Assembly (NCBI GenBank): GCA_051294905.1
Contig: CM119378.1
Coordinates: 20,212,001 to 20,276,000 of the forward strand
Length of the DNA: 64,000 bases
Direction of reading: 5' to 3'
Source of the DNA: Botryllus schlosseri
Lineage: Eukaryota
The notes under the pieces were generated by a model, which did not search any database, was not told the origin of the DNA, and saw only the letters and a list, made by a program, of their open reading frames with translations. Below, in pieces: positions 1 through 52,430 of the stretch. Each line of letters begins with the position of its first letter. Position 1 is the first letter of the stretch. A program made the position numbers and the translations under genes.

Positions 1-1409
1 TTACAGCGATGGGGACTAACGCTCATGACTTATCAATATGACATTCGTTATAAACCGACTAATCAGCACGGAAACGCCGATGGTTTATCTCGCCTACCAA
101 AGGGTCGAGACCCTGAGTTTGACGAACTGGAAACTCGTGAAAACGCGGAGATCGTTGACGCTATTAATATGGCATTCGATGGCTTACCGTTAACTCGCGA
201 TGAAATTCGCGACGCGACGCTGAAAGACAAAACCACGAAACTAGTAAAATTATCCGTTACTTATGGTAACTGGAATCCAAAGACGCACGTTGATGATTTT
301 TCTTGGTTTTCGACCCGCAAACATTCGCTTTCTCTGCACGAAGGCATAGTCATGCTCAATATTGATGGTTTTCAGCGCGTAGTAATTCCGCAGTCATTTC
401 GCTCGCGAGTCTTATCATTGTTGCACGAAGGACATTGGGGCATCGCGAAAATGAAGCAGATGGCTCGACGTTACATCGCATGGCCTTCCATTAATCGCGA
501 CATTGAAAATCTCGTTAAGAGTGGCGACGCGTGCCGTAAAGTAATCAAAGCGCCTGATCGTCAGTATCGAGAATGGCCGAAAATTTCTGAAAGCTATGAA
601 CGAATTCACTTGGATTTCGCAGGTCCAATAAACAATAAACTGCTCCTTGTCATCGTCGATGCGCATTCGAAATATCCTTTCGTTAAAGTAATGAATGTCG
701 GTTCTACCACAACCTTGTGTGCGGTCAACGCTTTGAGAGAAGTCTTTTCTATCGAAGGCTTGCCCATAACAATTGTCACGGATGGCGGGCCGCAATTCAC
801 ATCGAATGAATTCGATACGATTTGTTCGAATTTGGCAATCAGCCATATCGTATCACCGTCTTTTCACCCTGCCCCGAACGGGGAAGCGGAGCGTTTCGTC
901 CAGACTCTAAAAGCTGGATTGATAAAAATTGCGACGGGGGAAAATATCTCAACCTCGCGCTCCAAACACTTTTCGCTACGTACCGATGTGCACCGCACCC
1001 GGGCACAGACTGGAACACGCCTGCTGAGATTTTACATGGTCGGCAGCCGCGCAATTTGTTAAGTTTGTGCTTGCCCTTCGATAAATCGAAACCCGTTACG
1101 CCTAGGCTATCAGTCACTCATTTCGAGATTGGTTCCTCGGTTTACGCTCGCAGTTATCGACGCAGACCAAAGTGGGTTGCTGGCGTCGTGACGGAAATAA
1201 TGGGACGCGTGGTGTACATTGTCAAAACATATCATGGGTATTGGAGGAGGCACAAAAACCAACTCCAACCACGCTTGATTACCACTGATAATAATACAGC
1301 CACACTAGAAGTTGCTCAGCCTCAACGGTCACAAGCTGAGCAACTATTGGTCAGGAATAGGGCACAACGTCTTGCAACTAGTCCTGCTCGAGCGTCGCGC
1401 AGACGTTAA
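1..1409 (+). pseudogene. pol: Ty3/Gypsy LTR-retrotransposon pol 3' part (end of RNase H, integrase), frameshifted
   Basis: YDIRYKPTNQHGNADGLSRLP (RNase H end); HEGHWG...KSGDAC (integrase H2C2 finger, first Cys replaced by Gly); IHLDFAGP, TDGGPQF, HPAPNGEAERFVQTLK (rve core). Frameshift at about 940 continues into ORF 822..1409 (LALQTLFATYRCAPH...TPAEILHGR); stop at 1407-1409. 5' part lies outside the window. Confidence 0.93.
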
Positions 1410-11159: not shown

Positions 11160-11181
11160 ATGTCAGAAGAGCAAAACGAAG
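11160..11181 (+). CDS. Candidate first coding exon of the NLR gene (MSEEQNE+G)
   Basis: ATG at 11160 with in-frame TGA upstream at 11139; strong phase-1 donor G|GTAAGG at 11181/11182, compatible with exon 18157-18240. Linkage over 7 kb is inferred. Confidence 0.5.
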
Positions 11182-12432
11182 GTAAGGGAAATTATGAATG
11201 TGTCACACTGACAGGCGCACACCGCTCATACGTGTATGGACATTGGACATCAACAATGAACATTGAACAGTCAACACGTACGTATTCAACTATTCATTCA
11301 GACATGTTTCAGTTGTATGAAAAATAATATGAAAATCGCGAGACCTCTGCTCATTATCTAACCTAACATGTTATTAGAATGTCGTCACCAACATAATCGA
11401 TAGCTGAATTTCGCAAGTAGTGTAAGTACACGCTGGTGAGAGGTAAATATAATAAATAAACAAAGAAACCGGAAATGCAAAAAAGGTGCTTTGTTTGCAA
11501 AAATCGGCATGTATCGTTTCGTGAAATATAATAAATAAACCAAACACCGGAAATTCAGAAAAGCGTGCTGTGTTGGTTCGTGGTATGCAAGATGTGTATT
11601 TCGTATTGACTATGTGTAACCGTTGTTTCGGTCACAATAAATCTCAAGTGGCGTGGATATCCGTGCATATGGCTGATTCTCCACGCGCGGATTTGGAAAA
11701 TAGGTGTTGGAAGCGCGCAGTGACCTAAATATTATGTGCAACAAAGGCCTCTGACATCCTGCCGAATCCAATAAATACCTGTGGTAAATGCGATACCGGG
11801 AATTAACGTTTCGCAAGCTGTATGTAGGAATAATCATGCATGCGTTAACATGCACGGCGCTTGCGTAAAGTACACATGATAAATTTACAATCGCTCAACA
11901 CCTAACTGACTCTATAACAGAGGCGGGCAACATACGGCCCGCGGGCCGCATCCGGCCCGCGAAGGGATTTTGTCCGGCCCGCGGACTGTTTCCGTCTTAC
12001 ATGATAATGTGGCCCGCGGCCTCAGTCTGCCGAGATTCCCCACAACTTGCTTACTAGATCCAATTTTAGTGACTGTATGCTATTATGTACGTGTATGCGC
12101 AATTGCGCAGTGCGTCGAAGGTCGAAGCGAGAAGACTTGCATTATCGGCATTTATGATGTACTCAACCCTGATGTCGTTTGTGGTAATCATGGTGTTTGT
12201 CGACTACATTGGTCATTTAAACCAGGCTGATATTTCTTATTTTTGATTCCGCAACTGTCGATATGTAGCACTGCACAGCACACTCCTAGGCTTTTGTAAC
12301 ACACCGCTTATGCCAGTGTTTGCCAACTCGTCAAACGGGTCGCGGGCCACTCTTCAAATTTCATAGAGGACGCCGGCCGCATGAATTCAATATCGAGAGT
12401 AATTAGGCCACACAGTTGAACAACGACGCTAT

Positions 12433-13113
12433 GTATGTATATTGAGGGTTATGGCGCTTAACTGCTACGGCCTTGTGCACGAGGCCAAAGTGTTGTAGGC
12501 ATGTGCGCTGGATTATCCTACTACATTATAGTTGCCTCTCGGTGAGGAAAACGTCATCATATCACAGGCAAAATTGTGTAGGGGTTGCCGAGAAGTGATA
12601 CAACGTCTATTGGCACATGGTTTCGTAGTGCTATCTCCTTAAAATAGTATCGCTCCGAGCTATATCGAGAACATTGCAACAAGAGATGCTCAACCGTCTC
12701 TATGACGCCACATGTTGCACAAAGGCCATCTTTTTGACAACCCATTCCATGTAGGTGCGCGCCCGTTCAGCTTGCAATGCAGTCTGAAGCTGTGACAATA
12801 TTGCTGTTTCCCTTTTTGATAGTCCCAGTGGCTGCGAGATATCATGTGCTGCGTAAATTCGCTTGTAGAGATTTTCGAAATCATTCGTTTCAAATTCGTT
12901 TTTACATCTTGTGTGAGTCAGTTCTTTGATAATTATTTTGGCTTCTTGTAGGGAGAGGGGGATGTCACCGGGATAATCGTTGTGTTGGAAACGTAGCAGC
13001 TTCTTTGGCGAGTTTATCTGCGATACCGTTGAATCCAACCCCGCGGTGACTTTTCAAATGTAGAGGCTTTGCAGGCCCCCTAAAATGCTTTGCGCCGTGG
13101 ATCCCCGGTTGAG
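12433..13113 (-). mobile_element. 5'-truncated non-LTR retrotransposon (I/Ingi/R1-like ORF2 C-terminus), frameshifted
   Basis: LSKRETAILSQLQT / HCKLN / CATCGVIETVEHLLLQCSRYSSER (C-terminal CCHC finger) across three frames; short ATAC tail; 15-bp direct repeat GAACAACGACGCTAT at 12418-12432 and 13114-13128. Confidence 0.85.
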
Positions 13114-13282
13114 GAACAACGACGCTATCTCGTCACCTACTCAACCCTAATGAATTGATATCTTTGTAAATTTGGGGTACTGGACTTATCGAACGCCTTG
13201 AAATCTTAATTAAGGATTGAACCGTGTGTTGATTGATCAGAGAGGACCAGACATGGTGGCGCCTGTATGACGATGCTCAGTG

Positions 13283-13709
13283 CAGAGATGAGCGGATTTG
13301 AAATTTCTATGTCCTAATCCAATCCAAATCCGAACCTTCAAATCCAAATCCAAATCCTAATCCATAACTTTTTCATATTCAAGTCCATGTCCAATCCTAA
13401 TCCGATTCCAACTGGAAATTCAGAAAAAATACTAATTTATGCAATGAAGGGATTCGAAAATTTTCTTTCACAACCAACGATTCACTTGATTCAAGATAAC
13501 TTAGTAACCATAAGTACATTAATAACTGATCTGAATAAAGTTTTACGCCATTCGCCACACGACATTTCAATCTCGCAGAAAATCGGTCAATCCAATCCAA
13601 ATCCTAATCCGTTCTGAAAAAAATGTCTAATCCAAATCCAATCCAAATCCGTCAAAATTTCACAAATCCTGTTTTTTCAAAACCTAATCCTAATCCATGC
13701 TCATCTCTG
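13283..13709. mobile_element. hAT MITE, 427 bp, nested in the left TIR of the element above
   Basis: Perfect TIR CAGAGATGAGC; TSD GCTCAGTG at 13275-13282 and 13710-13717; AATCC subterminal repeats. Confidence 0.93.
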
Positions 13710-14099
13710 GCTCAGTGGCGGCTCGTCCTATAGGGCAACTGGGGCATTGCCCCACCAAACATTCTGTTCAATAACAATTCTTTACCATTTATAAACTCAC
13801 AGCAATCTATATATACCGAAATCACAGCGAAAATCGTATTCTTCTTGTCCTTTCGCTTGTAAATGCCCATATATAGCGAAGTCTCTGCGAAAATCGAATT
13901 CTCTTCTGTGTTTTCACTTTGCGAATGCCTAGCCGGGGCATGCCCCGGTAGCGCTCATAACAAGCTTTCACTGTCTATTCTCTCAAAGCCGCGCACAATA
14001 AAGAAACACTAATTTACTCTCTCATATTCATAAAATTACCGAGCAACCGGGGCACAATAGGTCTGTGCCCCTAAGGTGTGATGTAACAATCGTATCTAT

Positions 14100-15100
14100 A
14101 TCTGAACTCGGTTACCGTCATATGCTTTTCATCGACCTTTGCTGGTATAGGTCGATTTTGATGGTGTTTCACAGCATGAAAACTGTTGAAACTTGGTATG
14201 TCAAGTTGTGATGGTGATATTTAACACTGCCCCAAGTTTCAGGGTTTCTACTTAAAGTTTAGGGTAGTAATTTCGGTTCCGAAGTTGAGTGTGTGCTGAT
14301 CCGTCATGTATCGCAAACAGATTTTACTCCAAAGCCGGTATTGGTATCCATTGATTTTGACGATGTTCAATACTGAGATCGGTTATGACATTTGGCACGG
14401 TAAGTCTTAATGTTAGTATCGAACGCTGTACCAAGTTTTAAGTTTGTCACTGAACTATGTTAGTGGTAATTTCGTTTCCTAAGTCGAGTGAGAGCTGACT
14501 CGTCATTTATCGCTAACAGATTTTACGCAAAGCCGGTATTGGTCTCTATTGATTTTAACGGTGCTCCTTACTTAGATCTGTCGTAAGCTTTTGCAGCGTA
14601 TGTCTTGATTTTAGTATCGAACACTGTGCCAAGTCTCAAGGTTGACGCTCAATGATTAGGGCAGTAATTTCGTTATCCAGGTCGAGTATGGTAGAGATGT
14701 GCTCTGATCTGACACTTTAGCCTACAACGCATTGCGGATTTCTCGCAAAAGCCGGTGTATCGGTGGTAACGTTAACTGTGTTCCATACTGAGAGAGGTGA
14801 AGAGATGATGATATCATTCTCAGTTTGCATTCAAATATTTACTTTGATATTATATTCTCCAATGTCAATTTCACCAAGCCATTTGCTTACAACCCCCTGT
14901 CAAGCGCGATAGCTATTTCGTTTTCGATGGCGGCTAATGGCTGATCACTTGATCAGCCTATTCCTCAGTAAATTTTACGCAAAATTCGGTCGTTCGCATT
15001 AATTTTGACAGTGTACCATACCGAAAAGGGCCATGAGGCTACTTCTCGATGATGTCATGTAACAGTGCACTAAATTTACGGCTTTCATCCACGTATTTAT
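14100..15100. repeat. Diverged ~200-bp tandem array (about 5 units) inside the hAT element
   Basis: Anchor AAAGCCGGT(A/G) at 14331, 14529 and 14748, with weaker copies near 14138 and 14981. Confidence 0.7.
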
Positions 15101-16107
15101 TCGGTAATATATTTTCTAAAGGCGATTTCGCAGCAGACCTATAGACAGCAATAAAGCCGTATGTGTCGTGTTACAGTCTCCAGTTTCAAGGCCAAAATCT
15201 CCTATGCTGTACCGAGACCGAATTTCCGAGGCTGCTATTCTTAGTTCTTCAGAATGATGTTTTGGATTCAATATGGCAGGCCCAATGTATGAGATAACAA
15301 TTGCGTATGTGTGTGTCCGAACTCGTTGACCTTTCCAATTAGGCTTACGGAATCTCTCGAGTTATAGTCATTTCCATTTCTGCAGATAATTAGTCAGGTC
15401 TAGTGCTAACGTCAACCGTGTTGAATCTCGGGATCAGGAAATTCATGTTACCGTACCATCATTAAGTTACTTGTTCACGTTAAGGAAAACGCCATTGTGA
15501 CGTCATCTTGATAAAAAGTCGCATGCAGCCCTTGCCCCACCACCCGATATTGTCACGAGCCGCCACTGACGATGCTATTCTCAAATCCACATTGTCTTCG
15601 TCATTATCGGCGAGAAATGGCTGTGAAGTGACATTGCTGCCGTTAAAATACATTCATTAAATACGATTTATTCCTTGTATAGATGAATAAATGGTTCAGC
15701 AAATTCAGCAATCCGGCCCGCCAAGTACTTAATTTTCCTATATCCGGCCCGCCGACTAGAGAAGTTGCCTGCCCCTGCTCTATAACAACATGACGCGTGG
15801 TACTGTGGTAATTTTTCAACCCGAATTTATGTTCCAACGACCGGTCTTTTTATGCACCTGTAAAAGTAGTTTATATTCCGTGCGACAAATGACTCGGGAA
15901 TCCTGTCGAGTCCAATTATTCACTATGGTAGTTATACCGTATATGGAATCAACGTTTCGCAACCCGGATGTCAGACCAATCGCTTACACGTTTAGTAGCC
16001 ATGATAAATACAATCGATCTGCACCCAACTCACTATGTATGACAATATTACGCCACGATATACAATCACTGTGTTAATTTTCCAACCCGAAATTGAGGTG
16101 GTTTATC

Positions 16108-16719
16108 TCAAGCTCTTAGACATGGTAACATGTTATATTCATTAATTTCAAGTGTTGCTCCGGTGTAGTATATGTCAAAAAATTCACAAAATGATTTGAA
16201 ATTCAACTCAATCGGTGATCTGTTTTTCCCGTATCACAATTGCGTATCGAAAAATGCTGTCGCCATTGCATTCCGAAATATCGACATCTTACAAAACCCA
16301 ACAAGGTCAATTACTTACACATCGCCATGTGTTTTATCCACAAACCTTGCCCATCTAACTGAACCGCTGTTTGTATGATAAGAAGAAAAAGTGGCGCGAG
16401 CATATAGCATGCGTCCGGTTTTGCTTGTTGCAAGTTGAATATTGCTTGAATCTTTTCGTATACTATCTAGCGTGTCCAATGTAAAACATTCTTGGTCAAC
16501 AGATTTATCACGAACACTTCCATCATCACCAAAGCGATTGGTAAAATGTTTATTACATGCATCCTAATCAGGTATACTTAGTATACTTACCTTATATGTA
16601 GAATAAAGAACGGTAAAGTAATCGGAGATTTAGACTACACTGCATTTTGTCTTGATGTTAGTAGTATTGATACAATTTTTCCATTTCTCTCCTCCAAAAT
16701 AATTGTCATCGCAAAATCC
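16108..16719 (-). pseudogene. Decayed coding-like frame of unknown product, possibly a transposase remnant
   Basis: About 200 codons in one frame with only 4 internal stops in AT-rich DNA; longest open part DACNKHF...WARFVDKTHGDV (16319-16563). No family recognised with confidence. Confidence 0.35.
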
Positions 16720-17428
16720 TAAACACTAAAACACTAAAAGGCGTTGCTTGGGTAATATGAATACGAGTTGATATTGGATTTCTAACATTTTACTCCCGGG
16801 TAGGCTGCAACAGTTCTGGTTTAGCGGATGATGCCCACAAGAACCTCACCAACTCAACATGATACACGTATTCAAAAGTATCGCATGCTCACACCGATCA
16901 ATACCGAAAACACGTCGACACAAATTATTGTTTGCAGCGTGATTATTTCCACGATATCACACATCAAATATTGCATGGATGTTTTTGTGTGACACGAGAT
17001 AGAGTTGGATCACACCTAACTCAAAGATACATTTTATTATTTTATTATATTGTTGTCCCCGAAAGCGATTTTCACTCACTTGGTTGATAGCTGCGCGATT
17101 TGGCATACCACTGATTGACTAATACTCAATTCCATTCATCCTCTCTATCCGGCATGCTAGATTTTTACAAACACTTTGATCATCACGAAAGCAAATTGAA
17201 ATATGTTTGCGACGTCGAGCCTGGTCGGATGGACTTGAGTTGTATGTAGAATGCAAAACATCAAATAAATCGCAATATTGACTACTTCAAAATCGGATTA
17301 ATGTGTTTTGTATTGTATCAGTATTGTTCATTGGCTACTGATAAAAACTTTTCTATTTCTATCCATAAAAATATTTGTCATCATCACAAAACTCGATCCA
17401 CCGATAGTATACATTTCTCTTATGTGGC

Positions 17429-17754
17429 GTCTCGCCCCTCTTCTGATGCTTTCACGCCCCCAAGTTTGAGATCCACTGTTATTCCCGATTGGTCGCGACA
17501 GGACATGACAAGGCAAATTCTGAATATCTTCTTCCGTGTTTTGTCATCACGGATAAAACACCGAACAGTAGAAATGGTGAGAACTTGAGGTGTCTCGCCC
17601 CTCTTCTGATGCTTTCACGCCCCCAAGTTTGAGATCCACTGTTATTCCCGATTGGTCGCGACAGGACATGACAAGGCAAATTCTGAATATCTTCTTCCGT
17701 GTTTTGTCATCACGGATAAAACACCGAACAGTAGAAATGGTGAGAACTTGAGGT
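17429..17754. repeat. Perfect 163-bp tandem duplication
   Basis: 17429-17591 is identical to 17592-17754, with GT microhomology at the junction. Confidence 0.95.
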
Positions 17755-18156
17755 GTTCGTGTGCGAACCCCCTAAATTTGGAGGTTCGTTTTCGCAAACG
17801 AACCTTGATAAAGTTCGACATCAGTTAACTATGAACCTTTATAGAAATTTCATTTTTCTTAACCTCTTTGGTTGAAAATATTTCCATTTCAACTTCGGAT
17901 TGCTCTCTATACATGGCGCTGGCAGCACGGAATGAAATTCAGCACTAAACTAATATGAACCTTGCCAAAATCAAAAAATATATGTGCCGTGTAAGAAATG
18001 TTTGATGGAAATAGTCAGCTTTTCCGTATTTGAATATTGATGTTAGCGAGGCCTGACCGGCGCTAGTGTTTAACCATCTGCGCCACTCTCTTCACCTGTG
18101 AACTGCATAGGCTATTGAAAGCACCGCTACGTAATAATGAAATCTTCTGATTACAG

Positions 18157-18240
18157 GTGCCCTCATCAGCGACGTACGCACTGGCGGGGATTTGAACGTG
18201 AGTTTTAGCGGCAATTTCAAGTTTCATGTAGGAAATCAAG
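18157..18240 (+). CDS. Candidate NLR exon 2 (84 nt, phase 1-1): GALISDVRTGGDLNVSFSGNFKFHVGNQ
   Basis: Acceptor TTCTGATTACAG|, donor AAG|GTATGT, open frame, phase matches both exon 1 and the NACHT exon. Confidence 0.7.
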
Positions 18241-18382
18241 GTATGTTGTGTTTATGGATATTGTAAGACTCCAGATTAACAAATTGTATGTATAAATACC
18301 AGTTAAGATCCAAAAGTCCGCGCAATCTTCAGAAGTCATGTCACGTAAGATTTTAATATTTTTTCAATTCATAGGTCTAATG

Positions 18383-19928
18383 CAGCGGTTCTCAATACTT
18401 TTGGACATGCGCCCCCCTTGGCGATGATAAAAAAAATTGCGCCCCCTGAACCTCCCTGCACTTATCGTCATGTCAAAAAGAGCTCATAATCCAATACAGA
18501 GGTGGGCAATCTTTATGCTATTGACGGCCGCATTTCAATTACTTATGTAGCATAACGCCGCATTCCAGGGCATAGCCGTAATGAAATAACCGAACGCAAA
18601 ATCCGTATGTTTTAGTGTCTATATGCATTCCCACTGAACTCGGGACTGTTCTACTTTTCACAACGACCTATTGTGCGCACCGAAATCGTGAGTGGAAATG
18701 ATATGAATAGTTGCTGGGATAGTATATTTTTCAGATCAACGAATGAATTACGTAATTAATAGTAGCAGTATCACATATTACTATCAAATATTTATCCTTT
18801 CTCAGCCCATGCGATCAGATTCACAGGTAGAGTTGATGGAGGGAGTGCTCTCGAAAATTTAGGGCAAGTTATAAATGATAATACATCTTCGGCTGGGCCA
18901 ATTGTTATTAGTCACTTTGTTGAAAGCTGTTATTTCTTGACCCCCCATCTGGATTGTCGATTGTATCGGTAGTGGAAATAGTGGAAATATATTGAAATCA
19001 CTCTAAAGTACCATAAACAAATTTCTTTCGTGAGGAACACGCGATTCCTATTCCGGCTTAGTTTGAGAAGGGCGCTGCTATTCTAAAATCGAAAAATAAA
19101 GTCGTGTTGAATTGCGCGATTAATTAAAATCTCTCAAAAATTCGGAAGTGAGTTCGCAATTTCAATTTGCATGTCGACGGCCGCCAACACATACTAACTG
19201 AATTAGGTGTCGACTGCCGACCAATTCCCTTCTACGGCCGCACGTGGCCCACCCCGAACGGCCCGAAGTCTGCATATGGTATATCCTACGCCAAGTTTGA
19301 ATCCGCACTCCAGTTGTTGAGTCTTTTACATTTCTGACAAATTTCCCCAAACTTGTTTGAAATTAACAGAAAACATTGACAACAGGACATCAATTTATTT
19401 CAAGGTAGGTTGCACTGAGACTATAATCCTAAGGCTGGTTGGGACGACGGAGAGCACGGCGTCGTTCTGTCCAGCCATGCTAAATGTGACCGTATTTGGA
19501 ATTGGATTAAATTGTGTTGATTTAGGGTAGCCTACTTAAGGGCGAAACCGTGCAACCTATATTGCATCCAAGTCCATCTTAGGCAGTGCAGTTCGCAAGC
19601 TGATAACAACAGCGACCCAGCGCACCGAGCTTTAGGCTAATGCCAAAGCTATGAAGTAAAATGAATGACTTACACGTGGGAATTGCTCTATATCTTCGAA
19701 GAATATAAAAAAATCTCAAATGAAGTTGAAATCAGCCTATACTCCGTGGAGCGCAACAGCTGGAGTTTGAATTTGGCAAACCTTCTTGAATACGAAATAA
19801 CTTTGATCTTCAACAATCGTATTTTCAGAATGGTTGTGAAACACATGTTTAGCCACGATTTATAAAGATTTTGTCAATTTTTCGCGCCCCCCTGAGAGCC
19901 TCCCGCGCCACTAGGTTGAGAACCACTG
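18383..19928. mobile_element. Non-autonomous hAT, 1546 bp
   Basis: TIR CAGCGGTTCTCAA / TTGAGAACCACTG; TSD GTCTAATG at 18375-18382 and 19929-19936. Confidence 0.9.
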
Positions 19929-20311
19929 GTCTAATGTAAAGGAGTGGATAACGTTTGACTTTCCTGTATTGAATCACAGACGGCTAATTTAATGCATCTT
20001 ATACTAAATAATATGTATTATACTTTAAAAGCAGACTTGCAAGCGTATCAAATATCGTCTAAAATGGTGATGTATTATGTATGATGACTACGTCCTTTCC
20101 TTCCTGATGTGAAAATTTCGTATCGGAGTAGGTGGAATCGTTAATTCAAATACCATTGACTGCACCAACATCTAGTCGAAATCTACATTTAACAATGCAT
20201 ATCGATTACAATCATTCGGTTTGAGATCGGATATGGAATACGGCAACGCCCGTCCCCCGTCCACGATATTCAAATTCAACCGATAACGACAAACCGATGA
20301 ATACCCACAAG

Positions 20312-20460
20312 ACAGCGTAATGGTGGAGCGTGCGGCTTCTTGATCGGAAGATCGCAGGCGAATCCCGGGCCGGGCCAGAACAAACACCTGGTATGCGCGG
20401 CTTCCCCGCTTGGTATTCATCATTGCGGGATAGCACAAAGGGGTGGTGCAAGACTTATAA
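20312..20460 (+). mobile_element. tRNA-derived SINE (second family), decayed
   Basis: CAGCGTAATGG (A-box-like), GGCGAATCCC (B box lacking TT), head ending GGGCCA; 3' limit approximate. Confidence 0.5.
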
Positions 20461-20492
20461 AGTTTTACATGGCTATTTTTGCACCATCCTTG

Positions 20493-20935
20493 TAAGGTTG
20501 TAATGACTCGAGTCTTGACGCGACTCGAGTATGACTCGATTCATTGCGCATAACTTGACCAAGTCATATGACTCGGCATTCTATACGATTTGATTTTACT
20601 CCCGTCTATCGTCAGACTCATTCTTGTAAATAGGCCGTTGTTGTTGTTGGTATGGAATGTTTGGTGCTCGGCAGCAATGGCCTTGTGCACCAGGTCAATT
20701 AGTTATACATGTATTATTCCATTAAATCGTAAATAGGCCGTCTTACCTCATTTATCTGTTTGAATAAACATGTTGAGAGTGAGAAAAAGGAATATATTGT
20801 GAACGCGAGGTTTTCGATATCACCAAAGTGTTTCGAAAAATTGAGTTGAACCTGACTTGAACTCGATATCGAACAGTGAACAGTCTGAACACTATGACTT
20901 GGACTCGTACTCGAGTCCCAACACTCATTGACATA
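20493..20935 (+). mobile_element. Decayed copy of the GACTCGAGTC-repeat hAT family
   Basis: Starts TAAGGTTGTAATGACTCGAGTC like 54967 and 57965; right end truncated. Confidence 0.65.
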
Positions 20936-21052
20936 GCCAGGAGGGGGCCGAAGGGCCCATGACCCCCGAGTTAGAACCCCGGGCCTATCTTATTTTTTGA
21001 TCTCGATATACCTTAGCATGAATTATATTCGAACTGGTGATTTTTCATTAAG

Positions 21053-22483
21053 ATGAAAAAATATTGGAGACGATTAACCAAAACATGTGGGAGAAAGTAG
21101 AAGCAAAAATCATGGGCCAGCAAATTGCGAACACAGAGGATCTGGAACTTGAAGTTCATCCTCAGATAGTGCGATCTCCAGGATTCTATAGAGGCGAACA
21201 CGCGATAAACGCAACTCAGAGCTCGAAGAATGTATCAGATGGTATCAAGAAGTCGGAATATGTCAAAGAGAAGATGTTTAATTTCAGAATGCCATCGGAA
21301 CGTAATTTGATTTCATTCGAGTCGGTGATCAATGAAATATGCAGTACAGCGGACTTAAAAAAGCATTCAATTCTACATCCCATCGGTCTCTTTTCCCAAG
21401 CTGGTTCAGGGAAGTCAACTTGCATGCGTCGGTGGTGCAAACATATTATGAAAAATGTAGGCATTTCTGAAGGGACCAATTATTTACCCCATGAAAACAG
21501 TCGATTCCAGTTGATTCTTTTCTATGATTTGAAGAGCATCACGTTCGAACAGACAACTTCTCTTCAGGAATTACTTCTCAATGGAATCTTTAGGGACGAA
21601 GATGAGAAAACAGCTTACGATTGGATTAGGGAAAATGATTCTAACGTAATGTTATTCTTTGATGGCCTAGATCAGGCAACGTGGACAATTAACGAAAGTG
21701 ATGAAATCGATATTGGACCTCACAAGAGAGCAAGCACGTCAACCATTATGTACAATCTTTTGTCGCGGCATCTTCTTCCGAAATCTAGGGTAGTGATCTC
21801 TTCCAGAGAATTCAAGGCTTCAGCGTTGCCTGTTGGAACCAGGCCTCGAGAAATATTTACTTTAAATGGTTTCAGTAACGAAGATGCGGAGAAACTCTTC
21901 AATGCATTGGTTACTCAAGACCTGCATGAAAACCCGTGGAAGAAATTGTCGGATTCCCTATCATCGTTACAGCATATTTTGACCATACCAATGTTTTTGA
22001 TATTTTCAGCTCTCGTATATAAGGATTGTAGCGGTTTCATTCCCGATAATGTAACGGAATTGATCGCAAAGATTCTTGACCAGCTGAAGCGAAGTCCAAA
22101 TTTGCGGGCGAAACACAATATATCTGATATCATCTCTAAACTGAAAGGATTAGCTCATAGCGGCATGGAAAAGGGTCAGGTAGTTTTCACTGATTCGGAC
22201 TTGAATAACCATAATCTCACAGCAGAGGATGTACGCGACTTGCTCTTTACTGTCCCTGCACCGCGAAGGTCACGTCATCATCTTTTCAAAGGTGATTTGG
22301 CATTATTTTTCTGCCATCAAAGCCTCCAAGAGTTTCTATCCGCTTGCTACATTACGGAATTGTCTTGCGATGACTTCAAAACATTTGTGCAATCTCATTT
22401 CTGTTTGGGGCAGTGGTCTGTTGTCAGACGTTTTGTTTCCGGAATTCTTCGATCTAATTCCATTAAAAGTGATCTTGTACAAG
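21053..22483 (+). CDS. NLR-family protein, large NACHT exon (NACHT, HD1, winged helix, start of HD2)
   Basis: Walker A SQAGSGKST (21394-21420), Walker B VMLFFDGLDQ (D at 21661), sensor-1 VVISSR, LTIPMFL, FFCHQSLQEFLSA, WSVVRRFVSGIL. Acceptor TTTTCATTAAG| (in-frame TAA just upstream), donor CAAG|GTTGGC; phase 1-1. Confidence 0.92.
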
Positions 22484-22552
22484 GTTGGCATTTGTGAAAT
22501 TGTTAGGTTGACTATTTAATGGTTGCACTTCTAATCTTCATATTTGTTTCAG

Positions 22553-22860
22553 TGTCTGATGCAGATAAGAAAAAACGAGTTCTCCATGAAAATTTAATAT
22601 GTAGCCTAAAGTCTGCACGTGGATATCTGCTGCTTGAACTGTTCGCCGTCTTCTATGAGTCGGAAGACGGCAAATTGATTCGATCAAACGTACACGAAAT
22701 CGACTTGAAAGACACCTCGATTGGGCATGTGGGAGCCCATCTTATCAGTTCACTGATGGGTACTAGCGGACAGCTGGAACTAGTCTCGTTCGTGAGATGC
22801 GACGTCACAGACGAATTGCTGAATACAATGTCAAACAACTGGCGATCGCGGAAAATTCGA
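22553..22860 (+). CDS. NLR exon following NACHT (end of HD2 and first LRR-like unit)
   Basis: 69-nt intron 22484-22552 with branch-like TTCTAAT and TTTGTTTCAG|; phase 1 joins in frame (YLLLELFAVFYES...EIDLKDTSIGHVGAHLISSL); donor CGA|GTAAGG, phase 0. Confidence 0.85.
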
Positions 22861-23180
22861 GTAAGGTTTACTCTAATGCAGTTTTTTTTTATCATGTCAT
22901 ACGCGGAAGGCCAACGCCAACACTACAACAATAAAACTACATTGTCTTTAATTATTAGATTTGTCCTTATCTATGACGTATGTCCTTATTTACAGTAGTC
23001 ACCAGGTCACCATAGCCACACGCAGACTTTTTAAGTTTTGGTTTGGATGATCGCTAAGTAGTTTCAAGAGACCCCGAGTGTTTTATTTAAATCCTAAAAA
23101 ATAGACATATTTTCTTAAACGAAATATTTATTAGGCTACTGGTAGTGCACAATTACAGAACATATTTAACGTTATTTCAG

Positions 23181-23237
23181 ATTTCAAAGGTTAGTTTACG
23201 ACAAACATTAATCTCTAAAGATGCGGTACAAACCTAG
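23181..23237 (+). CDS. NLR exon: either a 9-nt micro-exon (ISK, donor AAG|GTTAGT) or a terminal LRR-like exon ISKVSLRQTLISKDAVQT*
   Basis: Acceptor GTTATTTCAG|, phase 0; read-through matches the LxxLxLxxNxI pattern and stops at TAG 23235-23237. Confidence 0.5.
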   Translation: MSKVSLRQTLISKDAVQT

Positions 23238-24076
23238 GCATTTTACCTACCTATAATAATCAAAGCAACATAAAATGAATTATTCGACAAGGCACAACTT
23301 AAATGATTGTAACGGCGACCAAACAGGCCGCCGAACACGGCCGTCAAACAAGTTTGCTGCACAATCAAACAAAGTGTGCTTGTCGGCTTCTATGCTTATT
23401 ATGTTTCCACACGTAAAAACTGATCATTATGCGCCATAAATCAGAAATAAACATTGGCGAGTATTGAAGGTGCACTACTTTTGTGAATAACTCCTTGGTT
23501 TAGCTATTAGCTGTACCACTACTTACCCTTTTTCCGGACGTGAAATATTATTAATCGTACGCTATATTCGTATTATCAACAAGACATAGCGAGAAACAAC
23601 CATTACTTTTCTACTGTAGTTGAAAATCCAAATTCTGGGAAACTACTGAAGAAATTTCACGTTACCCCAAAACACCTTAAAAAACACCGATTACACGGAC
23701 GACACTAACACAAATAATTGCACTGTAATTGGTCAATGGGCGAACGTGATACCATATTTTCTTTCATCAGTTAACGTCTATGGCAACTGTTCTCGTACTG
23801 GATCACAATAGGGGGCCACGCAGCCACCCATAAAATTGGTGGTCTGCGCAAAAAAAGAGTTAAAAACCGCTTCTCTAATGTATCTTATATCAGATCTACA
23901 TATTAGGCATGCTAGGAAAGGTTTCGTGTTTCGTGAAGCAGCGGTCAGCTACCTTTTTAACGAAACGACCTCGATTTATAGAAAAATGAAATCGATATTT
24001 ACATGTGACCCATTTTGTTTGCCTGATCGGAAAAACATTTTAAGTAATGCTGAAACGAAGTAATGCGTGTTAATAT

Positions 24077-50492: not shown

Positions 50493-52430
50493 GGTAGACT
50501 ACGGTAACAAGGTTGTAGGGAAGTAGATATTTGTGCTATACATTGACGCTGTCTCGCTCATGTTCTCTGTTATAGTTATGCTTGATGGTCGATCAATCGC
50601 TACAGTACACAGTCAGCAATAAACGGACGACGTGTCTCTTGTCGTGTTTGGTTTGGAACCCTAAACATGACTTCGACGTGTGTATTTTATATGCACGTTG
50701 GAACGAACCCTTCGGGCTATTGGCTTCGCCGGCTAAGCGACAGAAAATGGGAGGTAATACCCTGCCGTTTACCGCTATAACCCCTGAAGAAGTGCGGTAA
50801 ATGGTTCGTTGGTCATCGTTTCGGGTTCCATGACTTGTTTTCGGCTATACTATTCGGCTTTTTCTAATTGAATCAACATTCGAATTTCAACAGAAACATT
50901 TCTTCAAAAATTTCAAGGCGAGTCGTTCTCGATGTGGCTTGTGTACCAGCGATGGTAAGAACTGTTTCTGGGAATTGATCGCGGGGTTAAACGATGACGG
51001 CGATCATAGTTCTTGTCGACATCAGTGTCGTATCGCTATCATCCTTGCACTTATTGTTGTGGACGGTATACGTTTGACCCTACTGCGTTGATAATATTTC
51101 TGAGAGGATTTTGATTGTGTACGAGTGTCGCTCTTCGATTTACAAATCCAATCCCCGTGTAATGATAAGTTCTTGAAAAGGGAGCGAGTCGCTGTTCGTT
51201 GATTCCAACATTTGTGTGATACCGGTGCATGATAGCGTGTTGGTCCGGTAATCTTTCTTCGTTGGTGTCATCGTACTTGGGCCCGCCCCTCATGCTTTGT
51301 AGCATTCATTGTATGTGTGTTGTGATTGCATGATTTACCTGAATGTCATTCTGTGTTGTGACCCCCTGCTTGGATTTAAAGAAGTTTTGTTTTGTTGTGT
51401 GGCCTGGGTGGATCGTCGATCCTTCAACATTTGTAGATATTATTTTGTAGATTTCTCCCGCGTGTGCGAGAGTGCGTGTGTCGGTATTTCAATTCTTTAT
51501 CGCAAAATGTTGTAGGTCCTTCTCAATTCTTGTAAATATCTCACCAAGCTTCTTACGCGTGTGGGCGAGGGTTGGGTTTTTAATCCTTCAGTTATAGTTG
51601 TTGATGTATGTCTGGGTCTTTCGTCCTGTTCATTACGTCTCGCGCATGTCCTCCTGTGCAGGTGTTTTTGTGGGTGTGTCTGTCCCTTGTTACTTTCGTC
51701 CGTTCGTCACGTTTTGTTATCGTTGGTGATGTATGTCTGTGTCCTACGTCCTGTTCATTTAAGTCTCGAGCACGTCCTATGTCTGTCTGTCACTTGTTAC
51801 TTTAGTCCGTTCCATTACGTTTCGTGTCCTTGTGTAGGTGCCTTTGTGTCTGTGTCTGTGTCTGTCCAATATTTTTTGTCCAGTCCGTTACGTCTCGTGT
51901 CCTCTATGCGTAGGTTTTTCCCTATTTCTTTGCTCTCGTCCGATATGCCGCGTGTTCCTTATCGGGCTCCGATCTCGCATGTTATTGCAGCATGGTCCCC
52001 GTATTTATTTCATTCTGTTTTCCATTCGACCTTGGTTTCTGTTCCATAAGTTTCCCCAACGTTTTGTCGTATCATATGTTCGGTGGATTCTTTTCATGTC
52101 CGGTTGATTCTTATTTTCGTTGTTTCTTCGGCACTAACTATGATCGCGGTGCAGATCAAAAGTAGATTGCAACTGATCCTTCGGGTTATTGGCGTAGCCG
52201 GCTTTGGCACAGAAAGGAGAGGTTTGCCCTGTCATTACTGATATAGCTCCTGATGAAGTTCGGTAATGGCAAGTTGCTCTTTACTGATCTGATCACGGTA
52301 CATTAGGTCAACTATCAGACTCGATACACGGTTTGTTTTGGAAACTTCGCCTTTGTTCTTCCGCGAATTCACCAACCGTCCTTTGGTTTGATACGGCTAA
52401 TCGATTCTTTGCTTTTGTAGCTGGACATCA
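50493..52430 (-). mobile_element. Unclassified dispersed repeat, copy B (inverted, lacks the 93-bp array)
   Basis: Reverse complement aligns to about 44440-44740 and 45755-46580; carries different internal repeats at about 51600-51900. Confidence 0.8.

What the first reader, a model, noticed from the sequence alone, without database searches (positions are those of the whole stretch)
11160..22483. NLR whose N-terminus is a short RHIM/cRHIM-like amyloid motif on its own exon, with no death-fold domain
Seen: exons 11160-11181, 18157-18240 and 21053-22483 splice in phase 1 to give MSEEQNEGALISDVRTGGDLNVSFSGNFKFHVGNQDEKILETINQ..., leading into NACHT with no DD/CARD/PYD/TIR-like domain. Known: the RHIM core is (I/V)Q(I/V/L)G, as in RIPK3 VQVG; Drosophila Imd-pathway cryptic RHIMs have VHIG/LHFG-type cores; fungal and bacterial NLRs signal through short N-terminal amyloid motifs. 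Inference: LNVSFSGNFKFHVGNQ (core FHVG) plus ISDVRTGGDLNV form a two-arc beta-solenoid, so this animal NLR may nucleate an amyloid signalosome with a partner carrying a matching motif. The symmetric 84-nt exon could also be skipped or shuffled as a module.
Basis: partly seen in the sequence, partly recalled or inferred. Interest (0 to 1): 0.85.

Follow-up and report, generated by a model that had tools for sequence, protein, structure and literature searches.

The report
Sea-squirt NLR with conserved short N-terminal motif
An intact sea-squirt immune-receptor (NLR) gene carries a short glycine/asparagine-rich peptide on its own small exon in front of its ATPase domain, where relatives carry death domains; the peptide is conserved in related genes, but it is not a recognisable RHIM and nothing yet shows that it forms amyloid.

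Summary
The sequence features are as described: canonical GT-AG sites and consistent phase 1.

**Supported**
- Exon 3 is an intact NACHT plus NOD2-type winged-helix exon of an ascidian NLR.
- The 84-nt exon (18157-18240) looks like a real coding cassette. Homologous 78- and 84-nt phase-1/phase-1 exons lie 1.1-1.8 kb upstream of related NACHT exons in two contigs from another ascidian data set.
- No death-fold domain was found within about 10 kb upstream.

**Not supported**
- Exon 1 is one of 420 possible phase-1 start exons.
- Four bulk RNA-seq runs gave zero reads on exons 2-4, so no junction is confirmed.
- No Pfam family (RHIM included) matches at E<=10. FHVG lacks the core Gln and is IVAG or VIGA in the homologues.
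- No partner with the motif turned up among 1.84 billion proteins or elsewhere in the window.

**Context**
- Styela clava NLR paralogues carry death domains, beta-rich repeats or nothing at this position.
- A RHIM-NACHT protein was predicted in amphioxus in 2014, and tunicates were then said to lack RHIMs.
- Other first-reader notes on this genome make similar, unchecked claims.

**Verdict:** the motif is real and conserved. An amyloid-like signalling role is plausible but untested.

The parts
11160..11181 (+). Putative first coding exon (MSEEQNE plus 1 nt). Unverified.
   Evidence: ATG followed by a strong donor, AAG|GTAAGG. It is only one of 420 stop-free phase-1 ATG...GT candidates upstream of exon 2, and ties with three others for best donor match. 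No RNA support. No counterpart could be found in the short upstream flanks of L001 and L006.
18157..18240 (+). 84-nt phase-1/phase-1 cassette exon encoding the conserved 27-residue Gly/Asn/hydrophobic motif (ALISDVRTGGDLNVSFSGNFKFHVGNQ).
   Evidence: Canonical AG/GT boundaries. Homologous exons at L001:223-300 and L006:576-659 share phase, size and position. A DNA run of a second species holds 3 of the 11 sampled 31-mers from a 123-nt query that includes 39 nt of intron flank, so the match need not lie in the exon.
21053..22483 (+). Main exon: conserved helix-like leader (EKILETINQN...), then NACHT NTPase and NOD2-type winged helix. Open for 477 codons.
   Evidence: Pfam NACHT E 3e-15 and NOD2_WH E 1.7e-6. 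Homologues occur in ascidians only; the closest is P0001 at 81% identity. Walker A residues (G117, G119, K120) and D203/D206 of the FDGLDQ segment fall in the invariant columns of the family alignment.
21085..21087 (+). In-frame ATG inside exon 3 (MWEKVEAK...). This is an alternative start if the upstream exons are not used.
   Evidence: Read from the sequence. The ORF callers' products for paralogues begin at or near this position: P0001, P0005, P0006, and the Styela clava models P0012 and P0015.
22553..22866 (+). Next coding exon (phase-1 acceptor), the helical region after the winged helix (LLELFAVFYESEDG...). Its 3' end is not defined.
   Evidence: Acceptor tttgtttcag| at 22552. tblastn matches to the downstream ORFs of L001, L005 and L006 and to P0012 extend to about 22866.

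Best explanation
Shown:
- This is an intact NLR-type gene of an ascidian (NACHT plus winged helix plus helical region).
- A 25-27-residue motif on its own phase-1/phase-1 exon sits directly in front of the NACHT exon.
- The motif is conserved at about the same level as the NACHT domain itself (25-28% against 35-36% identity) in at least two related genes.
- Its pattern is A-L-[IV] ... G-G-[GD]-[DS]-[LV]-[NS]-[VL]-[ST] ... G-[NV]-[FIL]-x-[FI] ... G-x-N. That reads as three short hydrophobic-alternating stretches separated by Gly-rich turns.

Inferred:
- The motif occupies the slot where Styela clava paralogues carry death domains or beta-rich repeats. It therefore most likely acts as the receptor's signalling end.
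- NACHT oligomerisation would bring several copies of an otherwise unstructured peptide together.
- The copies would then stack into an intermolecular beta-sheet, possibly cross-beta or amyloid-like. That assembly would recruit or template a partner carrying a matching motif.
- It would be a lineage-specific motif that works like fungal or bacterial NLR amyloid signalling motifs, or like the amphioxus RHIM-NACHT protein. It is not a sequence member of the RHIM family.
For: - Exon conservation, phase and position.
- Intact NACHT with conserved catalytic motifs.
- No other domain between the motif and NACHT exons in three loci, and none within about 10 kb upstream.
- Styela clava paralogues carry modular N-termini at the same position. 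These are two death domains (P0014, Pfam Death E 2.2e-6) or Asn/Ile/Val/His-rich repeats, each on a symmetric exon.
- One such repeat region (P0057:1-240) is modelled by AlphaFold2 as all-beta, with pLDDT 79.8 and pTM 0.73.
- The motif profile's only hits in the PDB and in 1.84 billion proteins are strand-turn-strand segments of beta proteins.
- The motif length lies within the 11-30 residues reported for NLR-associated amyloid signalling motifs (PMC12261475).
- Conserved beta-arc glycines and Asn residues are hallmarks of HET-s-type motifs (PMC5485727).
- A RHIM-NACHT-repeat architecture has been predicted in amphioxus (PMC4262963).
Against: - No RNA reads fall on any of exons 2-4 in four bulk RNA-seq runs, so expression and both junctions are unproven.
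- No partner protein with the motif was found in 1.84 billion representative proteins or elsewhere in the window.
- There is no profile similarity to RHIM, HET-s or any Pfam family.
- The AlphaFold2 monomer model is unstructured.
- HMMs of the Styela clava N-terminal modules do not score this peptide, so the link to them is by analogy only.
- Two related loci (L005, L007) show no such exon within 1.4-1.9 kb upstream.
- No amyloid predictor or assay was run.
Confidence: 0.35

Rival explanations
1. The exon is real and conserved, but the peptide is not an amyloid or templating motif. It would instead be a short linear docking or regulatory element. Examples: an N-terminal strand that packs against the NACHT or winged-helix module for auto-inhibition, an oligomer-interface strand, or a peptide bound by a folded partner domain.
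For: - Conservation of the motif is equally well explained by this reading.
- No matching motif was found on any other protein.
- There is no similarity to known amyloid signalling families.
- The monomer is predicted to be unstructured.
Against: - Paralogues place bona fide homotypic signalling domains (death domains) and long beta repeats at the same position.
- The composition (Gly turns, Asn, alternating hydrophobics, no Pro, few charges) is more typical of beta-arch motifs than of helical or charged docking peptides.
Confidence: 0.33
2. The gene model is incomplete at its 5' end. Exon 2 is genuine, but the true upstream exon or exons are not 11160-11181, and they may encode a folded effector domain lying outside the region inspected. 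The protein would then not be 'motif only'.
For: - Exon 2 has a phase-1 acceptor and no in-frame ATG, so some upstream exon is required.
- Exon 1 is one of 420 candidates.
- No RNA data resolve the question.
- Styela clava relatives have long multi-exon N-termini.
Against: - No Pfam domain occurs in any + strand stop-free segment of 55 aa or more between 8.1 and 18.9 kb.
- tblastn with death, CARD and Styela clava N-terminal modules is negative across the window.
- The first 1.4 kb of the window is a retrotransposon integrase, not a host exon.
Confidence: 0.17
3. The gene is silent or decaying, or translation starts at the ATG at 21085. The upstream 'exons' would then be non-functional, and the similarity to L001 and L006 would be a relic or chance.
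For: - Zero RNA reads in four runs.
- The ORF callers' products for several paralogues begin near the position of 21085.
- The two-way similarity score of the real exon only narrowly beats the best decoys (40 vs 38).
Against: - The three-way consistency score is far above all decoys (76 vs 29 or less; z 6.7).
- Phase and size are the same in three loci.
- The NACHT exon is fully open with its invariant residues intact.
- Low basal expression is common for NLRs (general knowledge).
Confidence: 0.12

Closest known systems
Branchiostoma floridae RHIM-NACHT-repeat protein BF82280, among the amphioxus RHIM proteins of Kajava et al. 2014 (PMC4262963)
   Same: An animal (chordate) NLR-like protein in which a short beta-forming motif sits where a CARD- or death-fold domain normally would, directly N-terminal to a NACHT domain. 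That case is also a bioinformatic prediction.
   Different: The amphioxus motif matches a RHIM profile. The motif here does not and lacks the (V/I)-Q-(V/I/L/C)-G core. [quoted passage not shown]
Fungal and bacterial NLR-associated amyloid signalling motifs: NWD2/HET-S (HRAM), PNT1/HELLP (PP), sigma, BASS1-10
   Same: A short motif (11-30 aa) at the extreme N-terminus of a NACHT/NB-ARC receptor, rich in Gly, Asn and hydrophobic residues. The proposed logic is the same: receptor oligomerisation templates an effector.
   Different: Those systems are defined by a matching motif on an effector, usually encoded next door. No such partner was found here. There is no GxQxG or HET-s-type signature, the lineage is different, and the motif sits on a cassette exon.
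Mammalian RHIM (RIPK1, RIPK3, ZBP1, TRIF) and Drosophila cryptic RHIMs (PGRP-LC/LE, IMD)
   Same: A motif about 20 residues long that would comprise three short strands, with a hydrophobic-x-hydrophobic-Gly element followed by Asn.
   Different: The core Gln is absent (FHVG; IVAG and VIGA in the homologues). There is no profile match, the host protein is an NLR rather than a kinase, adaptor or receptor tail, and no amyloid evidence exists.
Styela clava and Clavelina lepadiformis NLR paralogues (e.g. P0022, P0018, P0057, P0014, P0010)
   Same: The same NACHT clade (24-38% identity in the NACHT exon). The N-terminal region is built from short symmetric exons encoding Asn/Ile/Val/His/Gln-rich beta-prone text, or death domains, upstream of a conserved K-I-x-x-I-N-x-N-T-x-EK leader.
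   Different: Their modules are longer, repeated and of different sequence. HMMs built from them do not score the window's peptide, and the window's motif HMM does not score them.

Membership tests
RHIM (Pfam PF12721; RIP homotypic interaction motif) | Core tetrad (V/I)-Q-(V/I/L/C)-G (PMC9444067) | tested here: not met
   The window has F-H-V-G. The aligned positions in the two homologous exons read I-V-A-G (L001) and V-I-G-A (L006). No Gln is present, and only the Gly and the hydrophobic character recur.
RHIM (Pfam PF12721; RIP homotypic interaction motif) | Match to the family profile | tested here: not met
   hmmscan against Pfam-A at E<=10 returns no family for the 59-aa spliced N-terminus or for any of the three motif peptides. 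A profile of the three motifs hits no RHIM or HET-s chain in the PDB at E<=10. HMMER's filters drop most matches above E of about 0.1, so very weak matches could be hidden.
RHIM (Pfam PF12721; RIP homotypic interaction motif) | Forms homo- or hetero-amyloid fibrils needed for signalling | not testable with these tools
   This needs ThT, EM and seeding assays. The AlphaFold2 monomer model is unstructured (pLDDT 63), which is uninformative.
NLR-associated amyloid signalling motif (functional class: HRAM, PP, sigma, BASS) | Short motif (about 11-30 aa) at the N-terminus of a NOD-type receptor, directly preceding the NTPase domain | tested here: met
   A 27-aa motif exon splices in phase onto the NACHT exon in the window and in L001 and L006. 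No other domain lies between them. The true N-terminus (exon 1) remains unverified.
NLR-associated amyloid signalling motif (functional class: HRAM, PP, sigma, BASS) | A matching motif on a separate effector or adaptor protein, often a neighbouring gene | tested here: not met
   An exhaustive hmmsearch of 1.84 billion representatives finds only L001's own ORF and two unrelated prokaryotic beta-sandwich repeat proteins. There is no second copy in the window's six frames. This species' own proteome could not be searched, so absence is not shown.
NLR-associated amyloid signalling motif (functional class: HRAM, PP, sigma, BASS) | Conserved Gly (beta-arc) and Asn/Gln positions interleaved with hydrophobic strands | tested here: met
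   Invariant columns in the three-way alignment are one Leu and four Gly (one of them in the read-through flank). Asn recurs near the exon's 3' end, and hydrophobic residues alternate between the Gly turns.
NLR / NACHT STAND NTPase | NACHT domain with Walker A and Walker B, followed by a winged helix | tested here: met
   Pfam NACHT E 3e-15 and NOD2_WH E 1.7e-6. GSGKST and FFDGLDQ are present, and G117, G119, K120, D203 and D206 lie in invariant columns of the family alignment.
NLR / NACHT STAND NTPase | C-terminal repeat sensor (LRR or other) | tested here: inconclusive
   Coding similarity continues only to about 22866. No LRR or other Pfam repeat is found in 22555-22992. Short relatives of 670-760 aa exist in Styela clava and Clavelina.

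The most novel reading that the evidence does not exclude
Ascidians were reported to lack RHIMs. They may nevertheless use lineage-specific cross-beta (amyloid-like) motifs as the signalling ends of their NLRs. In this species that would be a single 27-residue rung on a cassette exon; in Styela clava, covalently repeated multi-rung beta modules. If so, NLR-coupled amyloid signalling, known experimentally only from fungi and predicted in bacteria and amphioxus, would be a recurrent solution within the sister group of vertebrates. Cassette exons would allow motif swapping or skipping. Unchecked first-reader notes on other windows of this genome suggest the partner proteins may include caspases and PIDD-like proteins with matching motifs.
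Probability: 0.22. Interest if true: 0.8.

Novelty: new variant of a known kind. Interest (0 to 1): 0.55.

Why it matters
Experimental evidence for NLRs that signal through short templating motifs rather than folded death-fold domains comes from fungi. In bacteria and amphioxus such motifs are bioinformatic predictions. In animals the only accepted amyloid signalling motif is RHIM, and tunicates were reported to have none.

A conserved, family-specific beta-prone motif in the effector slot of ascidian NLRs gives a concrete, cheap test of whether this signalling logic exists in the closest relatives of vertebrates. The test object is a 27-residue peptide, and natural variants are available from paralogues.

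It also flags a large, undescribed set of beta-rich N-terminal modules in annotated Styela clava NLRs. If the motif turns out to be only a docking or regulatory tail, the result is an ordinary lineage-specific NLR leader.

Tried and rejected
1. **RNA support.** Read laying on 17400-23399 with four bulk RNA-seq runs gave zero reads on the exons. The only reads were partial matches to intronic repeats.
2. **Closest relative.** The contigs of P0001 (81% identity), P0002 and P0005 could not be fetched because the sample file is too large.
3. **Homology to Styela clava N-terminal modules.** My by-eye alignments (QxEGA..., NVxIxxSNIxI...) were not supported. HMM scores were about 0 bits, and 14-42% of shuffles scored as high. 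Pairwise Smith-Waterman scores were weak or not significant (shuffle fractions 0.04-0.98, none surviving five comparisons). The reverse search was also negative. I therefore claim analogy only.
4. **RHIM, HET-s or any Pfam family.** Nothing was found.
5. **PDB sequence profile.** Only chance strand-turn-strand hits appeared, to GH11 xylanases and HP0035.
6. **Partner search.** The search over 1.84 billion proteins gave no informative hit. The best other window hit (50586-50777, E 0.31) looks like chance.
7. **ESM Atlas look-alikes.** The best score was 0.71, which is uninformative.
8. **AlphaFold2 of the motif alignment.** The model is unstructured.
9. **DNA-level exon-versus-intron contrast.** The loci are too diverged to align. 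blastn between the Logan contigs and the window finds nothing.
10. **Exon 1 counterparts.** None were convincing within the 222-575 nt available upstream in L001 and L006.
11. **Motif exon in L005 and L007.** None was found within 1.4-1.9 kb upstream.
12. **Fold search of the Styela clava repeat model.** No match reached E<=0.001. The top-ranked hits, all non-significant, are mostly beta-helices and include the FapC functional amyloid.

Full report
**What is in the sequence.** The three stretches exist exactly as described.
- ATG lies at 11160, followed by 22 coding bases and the donor AAG|GTAAGG.
- An acceptor (...attacag|) lies before 18157, and the donor CAAG|GTATGT follows 18240.
- An acceptor (...cattaag|) lies before 21053, with an open frame running to the donor after 22483.
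- All junctions are phase 1, and the spliced product begins MSEEQNE-G-ALISDVRTGGDLNVSFSGNFKFHVGNQ-D-EKILETINQ...
- A further exon starts at 22553, also in phase 1. It continues the NLR helical region (LLELFAVFYESEDG...) and is similar to relatives up to about 22866.

**The gene.**
- Exon 3 is a NACHT domain (Pfam E 3e-15) followed by a NOD2-type winged helix (E 1.7e-6).
- Walker A (G117, G119, K120), D203/D206 of the FDGLDQ segment and other family-invariant residues are intact.
- It is the only NACHT gene in the window.
- All informative homologues are ascidian. They are Logan genomic ORFs (the best, P0001, at 81% identity), Clavelina lepadiformis LOC143458630 and many Styela clava 'NLRP/NLRC-like' RefSeq models at 24-38% identity.
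- The window is therefore from an ascidian.

**Is the small exon real?** RNA could not answer this.
- It gave zero reads on exons 2, 3 and 4. Only partial matches to intronic repeats at 18.6-20.8 kb were seen.
- The gene is therefore not detectably expressed in those samples, and no junction is confirmed.

Comparative evidence is positive.
- Two genomic contigs from another public data set (SRR23343704) carry related NACHT exons (35-36% identity).
- Upstream of each lies an exon with the same architecture.
  - L006:576-659 is 84 nt, phase 1/1, and encodes ALVQHEGGGDVNLTMTIVGNLVIGADN.
  - L001:223-300 is 78 nt, phase 1/1, and encodes TLVDSGGGSVSVTNYGVINIVAGGN.
- Both are bounded by good AG/GT sites, lie 1.1-1.8 kb before the NACHT exon, and match its phase-1 acceptor.
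- Global alignments beat composition-preserving shuffles: p 0.0006 (window vs L006), 0.012 (window vs L001) and 0.0004 (L001 vs L006).
It scores 40 against 1 for the next independent candidate (mean -33, sd 15).
- I picked the L001 and L006 exons by similarity, so I repeated the test with the selection step included.
  - I used 1,762 decoy pseudo-exons from both strands of the window. The real exon ranks first again.
  - On the two-way sum the margin is narrow (40 vs 38). On three-way consistency it is clear (76 vs 29 or less for unrelated decoys; z 6.7).
- A DNA run of a second species also holds 3 of 11 sampled 31-mers from a 123-nt query spanning the exon and 39 nt of flanks. The matching words could lie in the flanks.
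- I put the probability that 18157-18240 is a genuine coding cassette of this gene family at about 0.85.

**Exon 1.**
- Exon 2 has no in-frame ATG, so an upstream start exon is required.
- 11160-11181 is only one of 420 stop-free phase-1 ATG...GT candidates, tying with three others for the best donor score.
- The upstream flanks of L001 and L006 are too short to show a counterpart.
- I rate exon 1 at about 0.4-0.5.
- An in-frame ATG at 21085 is an alternative start. The ORF callers' products for several paralogues start near that position.

**'No death-fold domain'.**
- No Pfam family reaches significance in any + strand stop-free segment of 55 aa or more between 8.1 and 18.9 kb.
- tblastn with a Styela clava death-domain pair, vertebrate NOD2 CARDs and all Styela clava or Clavelina N-terminal modules finds nothing in the window.
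- The stretches between the motif and NACHT exons in L001 and L006 encode nothing recognisable.
- The first 1.4 kb of the window is a retroelement integrase.
- The claim holds as far as it can be tested without transcripts.

**Is it RHIM-like?** Not by any test available.
- Pfam-A, which includes the RHIM and HET-s models, gives no hit at E<=10 for the spliced N-terminus or for any of the three motif peptides.
- A profile of the three motifs finds no RHIM or HET-s chain in the PDB. It hits only strand-turn-strand pieces of GH11 xylanases and one other protein, at E of about 0.6-1.4.
- RHIM is defined by (V/I)-Q-(V/I/L/C)-G (PMC9444067). The related fungal PP motif is defined by GxQxG around a conserved Gln (PMC5485727).
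- Here the tetrad is FHVG, and the homologues read IVAG and VIGA.
- What is conserved instead:
  - A-L-[IV] at the exon start.
  - A G-G-[GD] turn.
  - A [LV]-[NS]-[VL]-[ST] strand.
  - A second Gly turn, then a hydrophobic-alternating strand.
  - A terminal G-x-N.
- That composition (beta-arc glycines, Asn, alternating hydrophobics, no Pro) is typical of beta-arch or cross-beta motifs in general. It does not place the motif in a known family.
- An AlphaFold2 model from the three-sequence alignment is unstructured (pLDDT 63, pTM 0.16). This fits a conditionally folding peptide but proves nothing.

**Partner.**
- An exhaustive profile search of 1.84 billion representative proteins returned only L001's own ORF and two prokaryotic beta-sandwich repeat proteins.
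- The window holds no second copy.
- This species' proteome is not in the searchable collections, so a partner is neither found nor excluded.

**Family context.** The Styela clava RefSeq models of the same NACHT clade show that the N-terminal slot is modular.
- P0014 and P0043 carry two death domains (Pfam Death E 2.2e-6).
- Many others begin MADQGQPQEGANVVNIQ..., followed by His/Gln/Asn/Ile octad-like repeats and a module such as NVEIKESNIHIMGGEGMITKGEGATTIIRDSVIIIGE.
- Others carry ETNITD-type repeats, each on its own 183-nt symmetric exon.
- Some have no extension at all.
- Clavelina P0010 has two short N-terminal exons of similar flavour.
- One Styela clava repeat region (P0057:1-240) is modelled by AlphaFold2 from a single sequence as all-beta.
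  - Strands are 14-15 residues long, with pLDDT 79.8 and pTM 0.73. This is the best model only; the other four are poor.
  - It also has a sub-threshold Pentapeptide_4 hit.
  - Its nearest PDB folds, none reaching E<=0.001, are mostly beta-helices and include the FapC functional amyloid.
- HMMs built from these Styela clava modules do not score the window's motif, and the reverse is also true.
- The relation is therefore one of architecture, not demonstrable homology.

**Literature.**
- NLR-associated amyloid signalling motifs are described for fungi, multicellular bacteria and archaea (PMC12261475, PMC5485727).
- Kajava et al. 2014 (PMC4262963) found many RHIM proteins in amphioxus, including a RHIM-NACHT-repeat protein (BF82280). 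[quoted passage not shown]
- My searches found no paper describing N-terminal short motifs in ascidian NLRs.

**Mechanism, and how sure I am.**
- Shown: an intact NACHT gene with a conserved short cassette motif directly upstream, in the slot that paralogues fill with homotypic signalling domains.
- Inferred (about 0.35): on NACHT oligomerisation, the clustered and otherwise disordered motifs form an intermolecular beta-sheet, possibly cross-beta. This recruits or templates a partner with a like motif. It would work like fungal NLR amyloid motifs or the amphioxus RHIM-NLR without being a RHIM.
- Main rival (about 0.33): a non-amyloid docking or auto-regulatory tail.
- Lesser rivals: an incomplete 5' model hiding a folded effector domain (about 0.17), and a silent gene or unused exons (about 0.12).

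**Earlier scan notes.** Other first-reader notes on this genome make parallel claims.
- They describe RHIM-like motifs on symmetric exons of other NLRs, on a caspase prodomain and on PIDD-like genes.
- They come from the same kind of reader, and only their titles were visible. I could not test them.
- I use them only as leads for the genome-wide census proposed above.

**Verdict.** The 'RHIM' label is not supported. The 'short signalling motif in place of a death fold' reading is reasonable and testable. I classify it as a new variant of a known kind, of moderate to good interest.

Noticed in passing
window 25-1409 (+): Long ORFs with retroelement integrase-like text (…HLDFAGP…VIVDAHSKYPF…). 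This is probably an LTR-retrotransposon pol fragment at the start of the window. No Pfam scan was run on it.
   Followed up: no
window 18600-20800 (intron 2): RNA-seq reads from all four runs match here only in part, at 95-99% identity. Loose ends include a poly(A) run after 20788 (run X6) and foreign flanks at 19423 and 20751 (run X10). These are probably transcribed copies of interspersed repeats elsewhere in the genome, not this gene's transcript.
   Followed up: partly
Styela clava proteins P0022, P0039, P0041-P0053, P0060, P0061, P0068 (N-termini); locus L003:11003-12704: A large set of annotated Styela clava NLRs shares a strongly conserved N-terminus. It reads MADQGQPQEGANVVNIQ..., then His/Gln/Asn/Ile repeats ending ...HLHYDNNAPPP, often followed by a second module (NVEIKESNIHIMGGEGMITKGEGATTIIRDSVIIIGE). 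Some copies contain IVQVG. No Pfam family matches, and I found no description of them in the papers searched.
   Followed up: partly
Styela clava P0018, P0034, P0057; locus L004:11708-18089: N-terminal ETNITD-type repeats of 33-61 aa, each 61-aa unit on its own 183-nt symmetric exon. P0057:1-240 is modelled by AlphaFold2 as an all-beta array of 14-15-residue strands (pLDDT 79.8). It also has a sub-threshold Pentapeptide_4 hit.
   Followed up: partly
Styela clava P0014 and P0043 (residues 1-180): The same NACHT clade also contains members with two tandem death domains at the N-terminus (Pfam Death E 2.2e-6). This shows that the N-terminal slot is exchangeable within the family.
   Followed up: yes
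window 21053-21140 and the starts of the NACHT exons in L001, L005 and L006: A leader of the form K-I-x-x-[LI]-x-x-[IV]-N-x-[NS]-T-x-EK sits at the very start of the NACHT exon. It is conserved across the ascidian clade, always behind a phase-1 acceptor. It looks helical, and its function is unknown.
   Followed up: partly
window 18141-18263; run X29 (organism B): A DNA run labelled as a different species holds 3 of the 11 sampled 31-mers of the exon-2 region. This implies near-identical sequence in a close relative.
   Followed up: no
window 21053-23000; runs X1 and X2: Two small 2016 runs of uncertain type ('RNA?', 45-50 million letters) hold about a fifth of the sampled words of exons 3-4. 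If they are RNA, the gene is expressed there.
   Followed up: no
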